NCBI GenBank assembly: GCA_002269645.1
Contig: NIVC01000907.1
Location: forward strand, 1 to 64,000
Length of the DNA stretch: 64,000 nt
Source of the DNA: Macrostomum lignano
Lineage: Eukaryota
Direction of reading: 5' to 3'
The notes below the pieces were generated by a model that was given only the letters and a program-made list of their open reading frames with translations, ran no database searches and was not told the origin of the DNA. How positions within the stretch are numbered: the stretch's first letter is position 1; every line of letters starts with the position of its first letter. Position numbers and translations under genes: made by a program. Of this stretch, positions 33,080 to 48,756 are shown in pieces.

Positions 33080-33229
33080 ATGCGAGTTCTGTTTGCTCTG
33101 TTGGTCCTCATCGTTGCGCTGTTGGCAACTGTAAATGCAGATGATCTCTGTGGTCCACTCTGTTACTGCATAAACGAGATCTGCCTCGGTGATTCGCCGT
33201 CATGCAAGGGCGACACTTGCAGGAGGTAG
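33080..33229 (+). CDS. Secreted six-cysteine peptide precursor, 49 aa, copy 1
   Basis: MRVLFALLVLIVALLATVNA|DDLCGPLCYCINEICLGDSPSCKGDTCRR*; TATA upstream, AATAAA ~100 nt downstream, intronless. Confidence 0.82.
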   Translation: MRVLFALLVLIVALLATVNADDLCGPLCYCINEICLGDSPSCKGDTCRR

Positions 33230-36200
33230 AGATGAAAAGCAACGAGTTCTATTCTGCGTTCTGCACAGCTCACGCCGTCAGAATGCTACTGACAACACTT
33301 ACTGAAAGATCTCTGTGTGGAATATGAAAAATAAACAGTGACTTTTCGAATATCCGAGTTCACTTCGGTGATTGCATTAAGCGCTGTTTCTTGGCTTTTC
33401 TTGTTTTGGGGAAGAAACTCTGAGAGCAAATTTCGTACTTTCACGAACTTCTGAGAGCAACTCTGAGAGTAAAGTCGTAATTAAAAACTTTTTGCCGTTT
33501 TATCTGCTACAATCGCGTTTTCATTGCTAGATCGCTTAGAAAATCAATTGAGATTTCTTTAGTTTCTTCAGAATTGATAAAAATTTTGCAAAGTTGCATT
33601 TACAAGCCTCTGAATTGCTAATTCAGAGCAAATATTCTGTCCAAAACTTTGGTGCACTCTGTGTCCTGCATGTTCACTTTCGTGTGAGAAGCGATTCAGG
33701 CATAGGAAGGCATAGGCTGTCATGAGCTGCTATTGACATCACCGCTACTGTCTCCAGGGCTGTCATGAGTGCTATTGACATCACCGGTACTGTCTCCAGG
33801 GCTGTCATGAGTGCTATTGACATCACCGCTACTGTCTCCAGGGCTGTCATGAGTGCTATTGACATCACCGCTACTGTCTCCAGGGCTGTCATGAGTGCTA
33901 TTGACATCACCGCTACTGTCTCCAGGGCTGTCATGAGTGCTATTGACATCACCGCTACTGTCTCCAGGGCTGTCATGAGTGCTATTGACATCACCGCTAC
34001 TGTCTCCAGGGCTGTCATGATTGCTATTGACATCACCGCTACTGTCTCCAGGGCTGTCATGAGTGCTATTGACATCACCGCTACTGTCTCCAGGGCTAAC
34101 TGAAGTGACACTCCCCCAAAAGAGAAACTACTGACACTCACCAGAGATGAGGCACTCATCATGAGACAGTGGCGCTCACTTAAACTGACAGTGACTCTCA
34201 CCATGAGTGACAGTGAAATTCACCATGAGAGACAGTGACACTCACCATGAGTGACAGTGACACTCACCATGAGAGACAGTGAAATTCACCATGAGTGACA
34301 GTGAAATTCACAATGAGAGAGAGTGACACTCAGCATGAGTGAAAGTGAAATTCACCATGAGAGACAGTGACACTCACCATGAGAGACAGTGACACGCACC
34401 ATGAGAGACAGTGACACTAACCATGAGAGACAGCGAAATTCACCATGAGAGACAGCGAAATTCACCATGAGAGACAGTGACACGCACCATGAGAGACAGT
34501 GACACTCACCATGAGAGACAGTGACACTGACCATGAGAGATAGCGAAATTCACCATGAGAGACAGTGACACTCACTATGAGAGACAGTGACACGCACCAT
34601 GAGAGACAGTGACACTCATCATGAGAGACAGTGACACTCACCATGAGAGACAGTGACACGCACCATGAGAGACAGTGACACTCACTATGAGAGACAGTGA
34701 CACGCACCATGAGAGACAGTGACACTCATCATGAGAGACAGTGACACTCACCATGAGAGACAGTGACACGCACCATGAGAGACAGTGACACTCACCATGC
34801 GAGACAGTGACACGCACCATGAGAGACAGTGACACTCATCATGAGAGACAGTGACACTCACCATGAGAGACAGTGACACGCACCATGAGAGACAGTGACA
34901 CTCATCATGAGAGACAGTGACACTCACCATGAGAGACAGTGACACTCACTATGAGAGACAGTGACACGCACCATGAGAGACAGTGACACTCATCATGAGA
35001 GACAGTGACACGCACCATGAGAGACAGTGACACTCACTATGAGAGACAGTGACACGCACCATGAGAGACAGTGACACTCATCATGAGAGACAGTGACACT
35101 CACCATGAGAGACAGTGACACTCATCATGAGAGAGAGTGACACTCACCATGCGAGACAGTGAAATTCACCAAGAGATACTGCAGTGACTCTAATCATGAG
35201 AGACACCGATACCCGCCAAGATGGACGGTGACTCTCATCATAAGACAGTGATACCAAAACTGACAGTGACTCTCACCAAGGCCCTCTCTCGGTCAGGCAG
35301 GGCCTTAGACAGCAGAAGTGGCCTCGCTGAAAGAAAAGCCGCCAAGGCAAGCCCACGGCGCGGAGCATGCATCCTCATCAAAGGAGAAGCTGTGTGGAGC
35401 TGCGCCAACACACTGAACTTAACTTCACAGTTTTTCTACTGACTGGGACTCTGCTGGCTGGGACTGTACTGACTGGCACTCTAATGACTGGCACTCTACT
35501 GACTGGCACTCTGCTGACTGGCACTCTACTGACTGGAATTCTGCTGACTGGGACTCTGCTGACTGGGACTGTACTGACTGGGACTCTACTGACTGAAATT
35601 CTGCTGACTGGGCCTCTGCTGACTGGGACTCTGCTGACTGGCACTCTGCTGACTGGCACTCTACTGACTGGAATTCTGCTGACTGGGACTCTGCTGACTG
35701 GGACTGTACTGACTGGCACTCTAATGACTGGCACTCTACTGACTGGCACTCTGCTGACTGGCACTCTACTGACTGGAATTCTGCTGACTGGGACTCTGCT
35801 GACTGGGACTGTACTGACTGGGACTCTACTGACTGAAATTCTGCAGACTCTTATCATTTCTCTTATCAGTGTGTATGAGATATGACACATTACATACGAA
35901 TTTCATTCTACGACATGAATGAAAATTCTATAAAGGAATTCTTTTATCTGTTATTGTGTGAAAATTTAAATTCTATATACTCGTACTAAAATTGATTTGT
36001 CGGTAGGAATGTGCGATTGAATTCAGAATTTGAGACTCAATTTGTACAAAATGTTATGTGGGCAGCTCAGTGTCGCTTCCTGAAAGCAGAACCAACGGTC
36101 ATGTGCTTCCGTCATGTGCGTTAGCGCCCCCTTGAGTTGCTTTGCATCGAAGTTGAAATCTAAGAGCTTAAGAGATTAAGAGCTTGTCAATCCATCAAAA

Positions 36201-36651
36201 TCTGTTTAGCTTACGAGCGTATGTGAACATTTACAGGTCGATTTTTAGATTTTGGAGGAACCGGCACGCAGGTGAGAGTTTTGATGCCTCGGCAACGAGA
36301 AAAAGTCCTTGTGAACAGCCTCCAGCGTGCCTGCGCACAGTTCAAATGCAGTTTCGCTTATTTTTGCAGGCGTGGAGAAAATGTCAAATCTTAGTTAACG
36401 CCATGCGAATTAACTCTAAACCATCAATCAAGCTCAATCCAGGGACATGAAAATTTATTGCAACCTGAGCAGAAAGTCGAATAATTTTCTGGGAGCTGCT
36501 TGACAAGCAATGCGTGATTTAAACGATTGCAGCCGTGTTTTATGGGATCTTGAATCTATAAATATAACACTGAGCAATGGCACAAAATCAAGCCTACAAA
36601 TCCTCCTACAAGATTATCGGCTGCAACAAGTTCACATCTTCAAGAAACAGC

Positions 36652-47101: not shown

Positions 47102-48606
47102 TTCCGTGCTTTCACGAACTTCTGAGAGCAGCTCTGAGAGTAAAGTCGTAATTAAAAACTCTACTGACTGGGCCTCTGCTGACTGGGACTCTACTGACTG
47201 GGCCTCTGCTGACTGGGACTCTATGACTGGGCCTCTGCTGACTGGGACTCTATGACTGGGCCTCTGCTGACTGGGACTCTACTGACTGGGCCTCTGCTGA
47301 CTGGGACTCTATGACTGGGCCTCTGCTGACTGGGACTCTATGACTGGGACTCTACTGACTGGGCCTCTGCTGACTGGGACTCTACTGACTGGGCCTCTGC
47401 TGACTGGGCCTCTGCTGACTGGGCCTCTGCTGACTGGGACTCTTCTGACTCGAATTCTGCAGACTCTTATCATTTCTCTTATCATTTTGTATGAGATATG
47501 ACATATTAAATTCGGATTCCATTCTAAGACATACATGTAATAAAAAGTCTATAAGAGGAACTTGTATGTATTATTTGGTTAAAATTTAAGTTCCACTATG
47601 TTCTGAAGGTTCATTGTTTGTCATATTTTTGGGGTTTTACTTAGTTAATTGTACATGTATTTTTTCTTGATTTAATGTACATGAGCCAACCCCCTCAATT
47701 TGCTAACCCCACCCCACGTTAAATAATAATTAAAAAAGGCGTGATTTTTGGTAAGCGTGTTTTTGCTAACTTGTTTGTTTTGTTTGCGTTCGCGAGAACG
47801 CAGAGGTATTGAAGGCTACAGACATCCGATTTTGCCTACTTAATTACTTGTTGGTTTCGAAGAGTTAGTCGATTTAACACACTATACTCGTACTAAAAAT
47901 GGTTTGTCGGTAGATATATGTGATCGATTTTTTAATTTTCGACTAAATTTGTACAAAATTTTATGTTGCCAGCTCAGTGCCGCTTCCTGAAAGCAGGGCC
48001 AACGGTCATGTGCTTCTGTCACGTTCAATAGCGCCTTCTTGAGTTGTTTTGCATCGAACTTGGAATCTAAGAGCTTCAGAGATTAAGAGCTTGTCAATCA
48101 TGAAACTCTGTTTAGCTAGTATAGTATATGAGTATAGTATATAGTATATGTAGTATATGAACATTTACAGGTAGATTTTTAGGAGATTTTGGAGGAACCG
48201 CAAAAGATTGAGATTTTGTTGTCATGGTAACGAACAAAAGTCCGTATGAACAGCCTCCAGCGTGCCAGCACACAGCTCAAAAGCAGATGGATTGCATCTA
48301 AGCCAGTTTCGCTTATTTTTGCAGGCGTGGAGAAAATGTCAAATCTTAGTTAACGCCATGCGAATTAACTCTGCTTCATCAATCAAACTCAATCCAGGGA
48401 CATGAAAATTTATTGCAACCTGAGCAGAAAGTCGAATAATTTTCTGGGAGCTGCTTGACAAGCAGTGCGTGATTTAAACGATTGCAGCCGTGTTTTATGG
48501 GATCTTGAATCTATAAATATAACACTGAGCAATGGCACAAAATCAAGCCTACAAATCCTCCTACAAGATTATCGGCTGCAACAAGTTCACATCTTCAAGA
48601 AACAGC

Positions 48607-48756
48607 ATGCGAGTTCTGTTTGCTCTGTTGGTCCTCATCGTTGCGCTGTTGGCAACTGTAAATGCAGATGATCTCTGTGGTCCACTCTGTTACTGCATAA
48701 ACGAGATCTGCCTCGGTGATTCGCCGTCATGCAAGGGCGACACTTGCAGGAGGTAG
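48607..48756 (+). CDS. Secreted six-cysteine peptide precursor, copy 4
   Basis: CDS identical to copy 1; TATA and AATAAA retained. Confidence 0.82.
   Translation: MRVLFALLVLIVALLATVNADDLCGPLCYCINEICLGDSPSCKGDTCRR

What the first reader, a model, noticed from the sequence alone, without database searches (positions are those of the whole stretch)
33080..48756. Four identical copies of a tiny secreted six-cysteine peptide gene
Seen: a compact intronless gene (TATAAATA, ATG 88 nt later, 49 codons, AATAAA ~100 nt after the stop) at 33080, 36652, 44188 and 48607 with identical CDS. It encodes a clear 20-aa signal peptide and a 29-aa acidic mature peptide with spacing C-X3-C-X-C-X4-C-X6-C-X4-C ending in RR. 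Upstream regions of copies 1/2 and copy 4 have visibly diverged, while the proximal promoter and CDS stay identical. I do not recognise the cysteine framework. Inference: a dosage-amplified, gland-secreted peptide (toxin, protease inhibitor, defence, adhesive or seminal-fluid peptide) of a possibly undescribed family, small enough to be missed by annotation.
Basis: partly seen in the sequence, partly recalled or inferred. Interest (0 to 1): 0.88.

Follow-up and report, generated by a model that had tools for sequence, protein, structure and literature searches.

The report
Tandem array of flatworm secreted-peptide genes
The flatworm Macrostomum lignano carries at least seven near-identical tandem copies of a tiny gene for a secreted six-cysteine peptide with no detectable relatives; the gene is real and already annotated as a hypothetical protein, but its function is unknown.

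Summary
The 150-nt ORF occurs four times in the window without a mismatch. Three more copies lie just beyond it on the same contig, NIVC01000907.1 of Macrostomum lignano assembly Mlig_3_7.

Each copy sits in a 594-nt core holding a TATAAATA box, the ORF and an AATAAA signal. The ORF has a canonical signal peptide followed by a 29-residue acidic peptide with six cysteines.

The identity is not specific to the CDS. Promoter, CDS and 3' UTR are all at least 99% alike, while homologous upstream DNA of two copy groups is only 79-86% alike. That pattern points to concerted evolution by gene conversion or unequal crossing-over, not to selection on the protein alone.

The gene was not missed by annotation. 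Five of the seven copies are GenBank genes (BOX15_Mlig011948g…, hypothetical protein). That annotation is built from transcripts, which implies RNA support. It starts 25 codons too early, at an ATG that probably lies upstream of the transcription start, and this hides the signal peptide.

Pfam, PDB sequences, HMMER against 1.84 billion representatives, Foldseek and a metagenome scan found no relative.

Best reading: an orphan, high-dosage gene for a secreted disulfide-rich peptide, organised like tandem toxin or defence peptide arrays. Tissue and function remain unknown. Interest is moderate to low.

The parts
32836..33429 (+). Gene core copy 1 (594 nt): TATA 32985-32992, in-frame upstream ATG 33005, CDS 33080-33229, AATAAA 33330-33335. 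Not annotated in GenBank.
   Evidence: absent from the called genes of L004
36408..37001 (+). Gene core copy 2: TATA 36557-36564, annotated start 36577, CDS 36652-36801, AATAAA 36902-36907. One mismatch to copy 1, at -142.
43944..44537 (+). Gene core copy 3: TATA 44093-44100, annotated start 44113, CDS 44188-44337, AATAAA 44438-44443. DNA upstream of -244 is unrelated to that of the other copies.
48363..48956 (+). Gene core copy 4: TATA 48512-48519, annotated start 48532, CDS 48607-48756, AATAAA 48857-48862. Type-B upstream region 47451-48362, 99.6% identical to that of the copies outside the window.
39852..39940 (+). Solo fragment of the core's 3' end (core positions 505-594), followed by the 59-nt junction and a 15-nt satellite array. 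Remnant of a further unit.
32103..32263 (.). 15-nt satellite array (TCTACTGACTGGGAC) about 0.8 kb upstream of copy 1. Equivalent arrays lie at 35435-35835, 39999-40266, 47158-47450 and 51899-64000; the last runs on to contig position 71821, 19.9 kb in all.
33715..35251 (.). 42-nt array (33715-34097) and 22-nt array (34187-35251) downstream of copy 1, forming the spacer of the type-A unit (period 3572 nt). The same pair lies at 30642-31919 before copy 1.
44537..47103 (.). Foldback-like element inserted exactly at +350 of copy 3. Its terminal inverted repeats are built of 161-nt subrepeats (arms 44537-44748 and 46892-47103, 98% complementary). It explains the sharp 3' boundary of the core.
48955..51845 (.). 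Second copy of the same foldback-like element, at +350 of copy 4 (arms 48955-49134 and 51666-51845, 98% complementary). Its internal 1.9 kb is 99.5-99.7% identical to the other copies.

Best explanation
This is a genuine, transcribed, lineage-restricted gene family of Macrostomum lignano (locus name Mlig011948). Each unit is a self-contained single-exon gene of about 340 nt of mRNA, driven by a TATA box.

The product is a 49-residue precursor. A 20-residue signal peptide is cleaved after VNA in the ER. The remaining 29-residue acidic peptide forms three disulfides, and its C-terminal RR is probably trimmed by a carboxypeptidase.

The gene stands in a tandem array of at least seven units interleaved with satellite arrays. 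Unequal crossing-over and gene conversion between units keep the promoter-CDS-3'UTR core homogeneous (concerted evolution). All copies therefore make the same peptide, and output scales with copy number.

The peptide most likely acts outside the cell as a compact disulfide-locked ligand that binds a protein target, released by a secretory (gland) cell type. A membrane-lytic antimicrobial role is less likely.

Shown: sequence anatomy, copy number on the contig, mosaic divergence pattern, annotation status, lack of relatives. Inferred: start codon, cleavage, disulfides, RR trimming, dosage effect, extracellular ligand role, tissue.
For: - Four exact copies in the window and seven on the contig.
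- TATA, ORF and AATAAA are at fixed positions in every copy.
- Signal-peptide anatomy: n-region MR, a 14-residue h-region with mean Kyte-Doolittle hydropathy 3.4, V at -3 and A at -1. This is unique among 518 candidate ORFs in the window.
- The GenBank genes are contiguous 225-nt CDSs. That annotation is built only from RNA-seq-derived transcripts with TransDecoder ORFs (PMC5730564).
- Core identity is at least 99% against 79-86% in homologous upstream DNA.
- Copy 7 is identical from -219 to +143 but about 4% diverged in its 3' UTR. The chance of no change in 363 nt at 4% divergence is 4e-7, so there is a conversion or recombination breakpoint at the end of the CDS.
- AlphaFold2 without an alignment gives a fairly confident compact model: pLDDT 76-78, with a beta-hairpin at CYCI/ICLG.
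- The mature peptide has net charge -2, or -4 without RR.
Against: - I saw no direct expression data. The locus name was not found in the held supplements of seven M. lignano papers. Reads cannot be assigned to single copies.
- No sequence variation exists within the CDS except the last codon, so purifying selection on the protein cannot be shown.
- No orthologue from another species was available, so coding conservation is untested.
- The annotated 74-aa ORF starts at an ATG in good Kozak context. If the transcript includes it, the precursor is longer, although the same cleavage site would probably still be used.
- The TSS, the cleavage site and the disulfides are predictions.
Confidence: 0.75

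Rival explanations
1. The ORF is a chance or decaying reading frame inside a repeated, satellite-associated DNA segment. It is transcribed at a low level, if at all, and makes no functional peptide.
For: The copies lie in about 65 kb of satellites and foldback-like elements with no other annotated gene. Identity covers the whole 594-nt core, so nothing shows selection on the protein. No relatives exist anywhere. The annotation threshold was only RPKM 0.5.
Against: A perfect TATA box, a textbook signal peptide with a -3/-1 site, six cysteines in 29 residues and AATAAA at a sensible distance together are very unlikely by chance; 0 of 514 other ORFs pass even the signal-peptide rule. All seven copies keep the frame open. 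The homogenised tract coincides with the functional unit.
Confidence: 0.1
2. The 150-nt ORF is only the first exon of a longer gene (the stop TAG overlaps AG|GTAGAG), or the real product is the annotated 74-aa protein, which is not secreted.
For: GT follows AG at the stop codon. The upstream ATG at -75 has A at -3 and G at +4, and GenBank uses it.
Against: GTAGA does not fit the M. lignano donor motif GT[G/A]AG (PMC8629364). The transcript-based CDS is one contiguous block. Homology among copies ends at +350, and AATAAA lies at +250, so there is no shared downstream exon. The upstream ATG lies only 20 nt after the first base of the TATA box, closer than the usual 25-35 nt TATA-to-TSS distance (general knowledge). 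A 14-residue h-region is too short for a membrane anchor, so even the 74-aa form would probably be cleaved at the same site.
Confidence: 0.07
3. The multiplicity is largely an assembly artefact: collapsed or expanded tandem repeats, or redundant haplotypes of the DV1 line. The true copy number is one or two.
For: The Mlig_3_7 assembly is known to be redundant, with 180 Mb in duplicated blocks at least 95% identical (PMC5730564). Units c4, c5 and c6 are 99.6-100% alike over more than 2 kb.
Against: The copies are in tandem on one contig, not on separate haplotigs. They fall into at least four distinguishable contexts: c1/c2 with 42/22-nt arrays, c3 with unrelated upstream DNA, c4-c6 with the foldback element, and c7 with its own 3' flank and an R49V change. 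c1 and c2 differ at 10 positions over 1.6 kb.
Confidence: 0.05
4. Specific-function variants of the main model. (a) A prostate-gland seminal-fluid peptide transferred at mating. (b) An antimicrobial or mucus defence peptide. (c) The predicted 'small negatively charged releasing factor' of the duo-gland adhesive organ.
For: (a) M. lignano has many small secreted prostate-limited transcripts, and reproductive genes evolve fast, which fits an orphan (PMC5977470 and PMC7336406, from the titles and abstracts listed). (b) Tandem arrays of small cysteine-rich secreted peptides are typical of defence genes. (c) Wunderer et al. predict a small negatively charged release molecule (PMC6410801), and this peptide is small, secreted and acidic.
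Against: (a) Neither the locus name nor the peptide was found in the held supplements of the prostate screen. (b) A net negative charge is atypical for membrane-active antimicrobial peptides. (c) The same paper reports that the releasing vesicles are PAS-positive with a low protein density, and the locus was not in its supplements. None of the three is tested.
Confidence: 0.3

Closest known systems
[quoted passage not shown]
   Same: Many tandem, partly identical copies of a small gene for a secreted disulfide-rich peptide. Homogeneity is attributed to concerted evolution, and copy number sets the amount of product.
   Different: Nv1 belongs to a known toxin family with a known target. The flatworm peptide has a different cysteine spacing and no sequence relatives, and neither tissue nor activity is known. 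The flatworm units are separated by satellite arrays and foldback-like elements.
Leech antihaemostatic peptides (hirudin, decorsin; 'LAP' cysteine motif CX6-12-C-X-C-X3-6-C-X3-6-C-X8-14-C, recalled from memory)
   Same: Small, acidic, secreted, six cysteines. The central C-X-C-X4-C-X6-C spacing falls within the motif. The predicted beta-hairpin is centred on the C-X-C strand. A K/RGD tripeptide lies in the last cysteine-bounded loop, as in decorsin.
   Different: The first loop (3 residues) and the last (4 residues) are far shorter than the motif allows. There is no Pfam Hirudin hit, no PDB sequence hit, BLASTP is not significant and Foldseek finds nothing. M. lignano does not feed on blood.
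Inhibitor cystine knot peptides (knottins) and conotoxin framework IX (C-C-C-C-C-C)
   Same: About 30 residues, six separate cysteines, a secreted precursor with a signal peptide, and frequent gene amplification.
   Different: The loop lengths 3-1-4-6-4 do not fit the usual knottin consensus (loop 2 at least 3, loop 4 at most 4; from memory). There is no propeptide, no sequence or fold match, and the disulfide connectivity is unknown.
Uncharacterised small secreted proteins of M. lignano, e.g. prostate-limited seminal-fluid candidates (PMC5977470)
   Same: Same species, short secreted products, little or no homology outside the genus.
   Different: This locus was not found among those candidates in the text held, and its expression site is unknown.

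Membership tests
Secretory precursor with a cleavable N-terminal signal peptide | Positive n-region, hydrophobic h-region of about 7-15 residues, and a c-region with small residues at -3 and -1 | tested here: met
   M-R, then VLFALLVLIVALLA (mean Kyte-Doolittle hydropathy 3.4), then T-V-N-A|D. This rests on a crude rule-based scan, not SignalP.
Tandem gene array under concerted evolution | Paralogues in tandem that are far more alike within the gene than in homologous flanking DNA, with mosaic breakpoints | tested here: met
   The core is at least 99% identical against 79-86% in the homologous upstream region of types A and B. Copy 7 is identical up to +143 and about 4% diverged after it.
Hirudin / leech antihaemostatic (LAP) peptides | Cysteine spacing CX6-12-C-X-C-X3-6-C-X3-6-C-X8-14-C, and sequence or profile similarity to Pfam Hirudin | tested here: not met
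   The spacing is 3-1-4-6-4, so the first and last loops are out of range. There are no Pfam or PDB hits at E<=10, and BLASTP gives E=0.58 and 0.038 on short chance segments.
Inhibitor cystine knot (knottin) | Loop-length consensus and the knotted I-IV, II-V, III-VI connectivity | tested here: inconclusive
   Loop 2 (1 residue) and loop 4 (6 residues) fall outside the usual ranges (from memory). Foldseek on two AlphaFold2 models gave no hit. Connectivity cannot be tested with these tools.
Cysteine-stabilised alpha-beta (CS-alpha-beta) defensins | CXXXC on a helix paired with a downstream CXC on a strand, and usually a cationic peptide | tested here: not met
   CXXXC is followed directly by XC and there is no separate downstream CXC. 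No helix is predicted in that segment. The net charge is -2.
Any curated protein family or solved structure | Significant profile, sequence or fold match | tested here: not met
   Pfam 0 hits. PDB sequences 0 hits. Among 5.8 billion clusters only the query's own cluster was found. Among 1.84 billion representatives the hits were the query itself plus one spurious repeat protein with two cysteines per repeat. Foldseek 0 hits. A peptide of 29 residues gives little statistical power.
Transcribed gene (M. lignano Mlig_RNA_3_7 annotation) | A gene model derived from RNA-seq assembly | tested here: met
   Five copies are GenBank genes, e.g. BOX15_Mlig011948g8 / PAA75019.1. The annotation pipeline uses only transcript evidence. 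I did not see read-level data.

The most novel reading that the evidence does not exclude
The peptide founds a Macrostomum-restricted disulfide-rich family with a fold and cysteine framework not yet described. It may have been born de novo in satellite-rich DNA and then been amplified. It would act at high dose as an extracellular ligand, for example through its cysteine-bounded KGD loop (CKGDTC), in mating, defence or adhesion and release.
Probability: 0.2. Interest if true: 0.55.

Novelty: new member of a known kind. Interest (0 to 1): 0.3.

Why it matters
If the peptide is made as predicted, it adds an uncharacterised disulfide-rich scaffold from a transgenic, RNAi-amenable flatworm model.

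The locus is also a compact example of concerted evolution: a whole promoter-to-poly(A) unit kept homogeneous between satellite arrays.

A practical point follows for anyone using the genome. The deposited gene models start 25 codons too early, so secretome screens based on them would probably miss this family, and two of the seven copies are unannotated.

It does not resolve a long-standing question. The one tempting link, to the unknown negatively charged release factor of flatworm adhesion, is weakened by published data on the releasing vesicles.

Tried and rejected
- Homology. I tried a word-seeded search of 5.8 billion proteins, full HMMER against 1.84 billion representatives, Pfam, PDB sequences, Foldseek on two AlphaFold2 models, a JGI metagenome scan, and tblastn for diverged paralogues in the 93.5 kb of contig held. 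The only outside hit, P0003, is a repeat protein with two cysteines per repeat and was rejected as spurious.
- Expression. 'Mlig011948' is in no full text and in none of the held supplements of seven M. lignano papers. Several of those files are truncated, so this is not evidence of absence.
- Exon-1 idea (stop codon overlapping a GT): rejected on the species' donor motif, the contiguous annotated CDS and the end of homology at +350.
- Trans-splice acceptor just before the ATG (AAACAG): does not fit [T/C]TNCAG.
- Mobile 594-nt cassette, suggested by the sharp borders: rejected. The 3' border in c3-c6 is the insertion point of a foldback-like element, and in c1/c2 the flank simply continues.
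- The 15-nt satellite as coding sequence of a giant repeat protein: ORFs break every 0.5-1.7 kb and no gene is annotated there.
- Hirudin/decorsin membership and the release-factor idea: see the membership and rival sections.
- Structured RNAs in the window: no Rfam family or tRNA found.
- Two broad literature searches for Macrostomum toxins, antimicrobial peptides or orphan secreted genes gave nothing relevant.
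Full report
**1. Observation**

In all four copies TATAAATA lies at -95..-88 relative to the ATG, the stop is TAG, and AATAAA starts 101 nt after the stop. The product is MRVLFALLVLIVALLATVNA|DDLCGPLCYCINEICLGDSPSCKGDTCRR.

The N-terminus has the three regions of a cleavable signal peptide:
- n-region: M-R;
- h-region: 14 residues, mean Kyte-Doolittle hydropathy 3.4;
- c-region: V at -3 and A at -1.

With a crude rule for these features, only the four copies pass among 518 Met-started ORFs of at least 35 aa in the six frames of the window. 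The mature part has 29 residues, six cysteines spaced 3-1-4-6-4, and a net charge of -2, or -4 if the terminal RR is trimmed.

**2. Where the window comes from, and the annotation**

An exact look-up shows that the window is the first 64 kb of contig NIVC01000907.1 (370,857 bp) of assembly GCA_002269645.1. A sister protein is named 'hypothetical protein BOX15_Mlig011948g8 [Macrostomum lignano]' (PAA75019.1, UniRef A0A267FPR1). [quoted passage not shown]

The gene is already annotated. Copies 2, 3 and 4 in the window and two copies beyond it are called as contiguous 225-nt CDSs of 74 aa. Copy 1 and one outside copy are not called.

The GenBank annotation of this assembly was made only from RNA-seq-derived transcripts (StringTie/TACO plus a de novo transcriptome, ORFs by TransDecoder, novel transcripts below RPKM 0.5 discarded) (PMC5730564). 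An annotated model therefore implies transcript support. I could not inspect reads, and identical copies cannot be told apart by short reads.

The 74-aa model begins at an in-frame ATG at -75, directly after a TGA. That ATG lies only 20 nt after the first base of the TATA box, closer than the usual 25-35 nt TATA-to-start distance (general knowledge). It is most likely outside the mRNA, and the longest-ORF rule would then have produced a false 25-residue extension that masks the signal peptide. Even if the extension were translated, the 14-residue hydrophobic stretch is too short for a membrane anchor and the same cleavage site would probably be used (inference).

**3. Anatomy of the locus**

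I joined the window to two fetched loci to obtain contig positions 1-93,497. This stretch holds seven copies of a 594-nt core (-244..+350):
- in the window: 32836, 36408, 43944, 48363;
- outside the window: 72734, 77054, 83104.

A fragment of the core's 3' end lies at 39852-39940.

Copies 1-6 differ from each other at no more than 6 of 594 positions, and none of those lies in the CDS. Copy 7 is identical from -219 to +143. From there on:
- its last codon is GTG instead of AGG (R49V, protein P0002);
- its 3' UTR differs at about 4% of positions, with AATAAA kept;
- homology ends near +310.

Each copy lies 0.8-0.95 kb downstream of an array of a 15-nt satellite. The arrays range from 161 bp to 19.9 kb, and the 12 kb at the end of the window belongs to the longest one.

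There are two unit types. Type A (copies 1 and 2, period 3572 nt) has 42-nt and 22-nt arrays as spacer. Type B (copies 4-7) shares a 912-nt upstream segment at 99.6% identity.

The type A and type B upstream segments are homologous but only 79-86% identical, with indels, whereas the cores are at least 99% identical. At 15% divergence about 89 differences would be expected in the core; 6 are seen.

The sharp 3' border at +350 in copies 3-6 is the insertion point of a 2.6-2.9 kb foldback-like element whose terminal inverted repeats are built of 161-nt subrepeats. In copies 1 and 2 the original flank continues, and the same 59 nt reappear after the element in copies 3 and 4.

No other gene is annotated between the SNX17-like gene, which ends near 28.7 kb, and 93.5 kb.

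**4. What the pattern means**

The data show something different. Promoter, CDS and 3' UTR are equally homogeneous, including sites that would be neutral. This is the signature of concerted evolution by gene conversion or unequal crossing-over in a tandem array. Very recent duplication of the core is the alternative.

Copy 7 supports conversion. A 363-nt tract without a single change sits next to a 3' UTR at 4% divergence. The chance of that is 4e-7 if divergence were uniform, so there is a recombination breakpoint at the end of the CDS.

The homogenised tract coincides with the functional unit, from about 125 nt upstream of the TATA box to about 95 nt past AATAAA. This fits selection for many equal copies but does not prove it. 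With only one coding difference among seven copies, at the last residue, no dN/dS test is possible.

**5. Rivals**

(a) Exon 1 of a longer gene. The stop TAG overlaps AG|GTAGAG. However:
- GTAGA does not fit the donor motif GT[G/A]AG of this species (PMC8629364);
- the transcript-based CDS is contiguous;
- the copies share nothing downstream of +350, while AATAAA lies at +250.

(b) SL trans-splicing just before the ATG. AAACAG does not fit [T/C]TNCAG.

(c) Chance ORF in repeated DNA. This is unlikely given the joint presence of TATA, signal peptide, six cysteines and a poly(A) signal, and the transcript-based annotation. It cannot be excluded without reads.

(d) Assembly artefact. The assembly is known to be redundant. 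Even so, the copies are in tandem on one contig and fall into at least four distinguishable contexts, and copies 1 and 2 differ at 10 sites over 1.6 kb. The exact number of the near-identical type-B units could be wrong.

**6. Relatives**

None was found.
- The word-seeded search of 5.8 billion clustered proteins returned only the gene's own cluster, which has two members, both from this contig.
- A full HMMER scan of 1.84 billion representatives returned the protein itself and one 627-aa repeat protein whose repeats hold two cysteines and match only residues 23-41. I regard that hit as spurious.
- Pfam and PDB sequences gave nothing at E<=10.
- A JGI metagenome scan found nothing.
- tblastn found no diverged paralogue in the 93.5 kb held.
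- AlphaFold2 without an alignment gave moderately confident models (pLDDT 78 and 76). These show the signal helix and, in the mature part, a beta-hairpin formed by CYCI and ICLG. Foldseek against the PDB found nothing for either model.

A 29-residue query has little power, and genomes and transcriptomes of other Macrostomum species were not searchable here. The peptide is an orphan only so far as these tools can see.

From memory, the nearest cysteine framework is the leech antihaemostatic (hirudin/decorsin) motif. Its central C-X-C-X3-6-C-X3-6-C part fits, and those peptides are also small and acidic. The two outer loops are far too short, however, and direct BLASTP against hirudin and decorsin is not significant. 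Membership is not supported. Knottin and CS-alpha-beta spacings do not fit either.

**7. Likely mode of action**

Shown: a self-contained small gene with secretory-precursor anatomy, present in at least seven homogenised tandem copies.

Inferred: transcription from the TATA box, translation from the second ATG, cleavage after A20, three disulfides, removal of the C-terminal RR, and secretion in amounts that scale with copy number.

The closest functional analogue is the Nv1 toxin array of Nematostella vectensis. There, identical tandem copies of a small disulfide-rich peptide gene are kept homogeneous, and copy number correlates with transcript and protein level (PMC9842752).

The acidic charge argues against a membrane-lytic antimicrobial peptide and for a target-binding ligand. 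The tripeptide KGD sits in the last cysteine-bounded loop (CKGDTC). A K/RGD tripeptide is expected by chance in about 0.7% of 29-mers. I noticed it after the fact, so it is a lead only.

The published prediction of 'a small negatively charged molecule' that releases the worm's temporary adhesive (PMC6410801) is tempting. The same paper, however, reports that the releasing vesicles are PAS-positive with a low protein density, and the locus is not in the paper's supplements.

Tissue and activity remain open. I found the locus name in no paper or held supplement.

**8. Verdict**

The feature is a real but ordinary kind of thing: a lineage-restricted gene for a secreted cysteine-rich peptide, in a tandem array under concerted evolution. 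It is already deposited as a hypothetical protein with a probably wrong start codon. It is worth a line in a secretome or gland-transcript study of M. lignano, but it is not a surprise for a specialist.

- Interest: 0.3.
- Confidence in the main model: 0.75.
- Most novel reading not excluded: a new fold or family, possibly born de novo, with a defined extracellular target. Probability about 0.2.

Noticed in passing
window 51899-64000 (continues to contig position 71821): A 19.9-kb array of a 15-nt satellite (ACTCTACTGACTGGG, about 1320 units, 88% matches, strong AT skew of -0.24). Short arrays of the same satellite precede every peptide-gene copy. Two + frames (TLLTG, STDWD) are open in the consensus, but ORFs break every 0.5-1.7 kb and no gene is annotated there.
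   Followed up: partly
window 44537-47103 and 48955-51845 (further copies outside the window, internal parts at contig 73540-75462 and 77860-79783): Foldback-like elements of 2.6-2.9 kb with terminal inverted repeats made of 161-nt tandem subrepeats (arms 98% complementary). They are inserted at the same site, +350 of the peptide-gene core, and I saw no obvious target-site duplication. The internal 1.9 kb is 99.5-99.7% identical among copies.
   Followed up: partly
window 40682-43051: A second kind of foldback-like structure: inverted arrays of a 30/60-nt repeat (40682-41442 and 42683-43053, 92-95% complementary) around about 1.2 kb of other DNA. It lies between the core fragment at 39852 and copy 3.
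   Followed up: no
window about 26577-28661 (+) and 6509-6976 (+): Ordinary genes flank the array on the left. One is an SNX17/27/31-type sorting nexin (PX and FERM domains; Pfam F1-lobe hit E=3e-25). The other is a bZIP transcription-factor ORF (bZIP_1, E=8e-9).
   Followed up: partly
window 7677-8695, 25642-26589, 27247-27675, 29088-29668: Further tandem arrays with periods of 19, 28, 28 and 36 nt. Some lie inside or next to the sorting-nexin gene region. The 19-nt array coincides with long ORFs on the minus strand (up to 398 aa) that had no Pfam check.
   Followed up: no
L005 10001-10225 (contig 83273-83497): Copy 7 encodes ...TCRV instead of ...TCRR. This is a two-base change in the last codon, exactly where identity to the other copies ends. 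It is the only coding variant in the array and shows that the last residue is dispensable or trimmed.
   Followed up: yes
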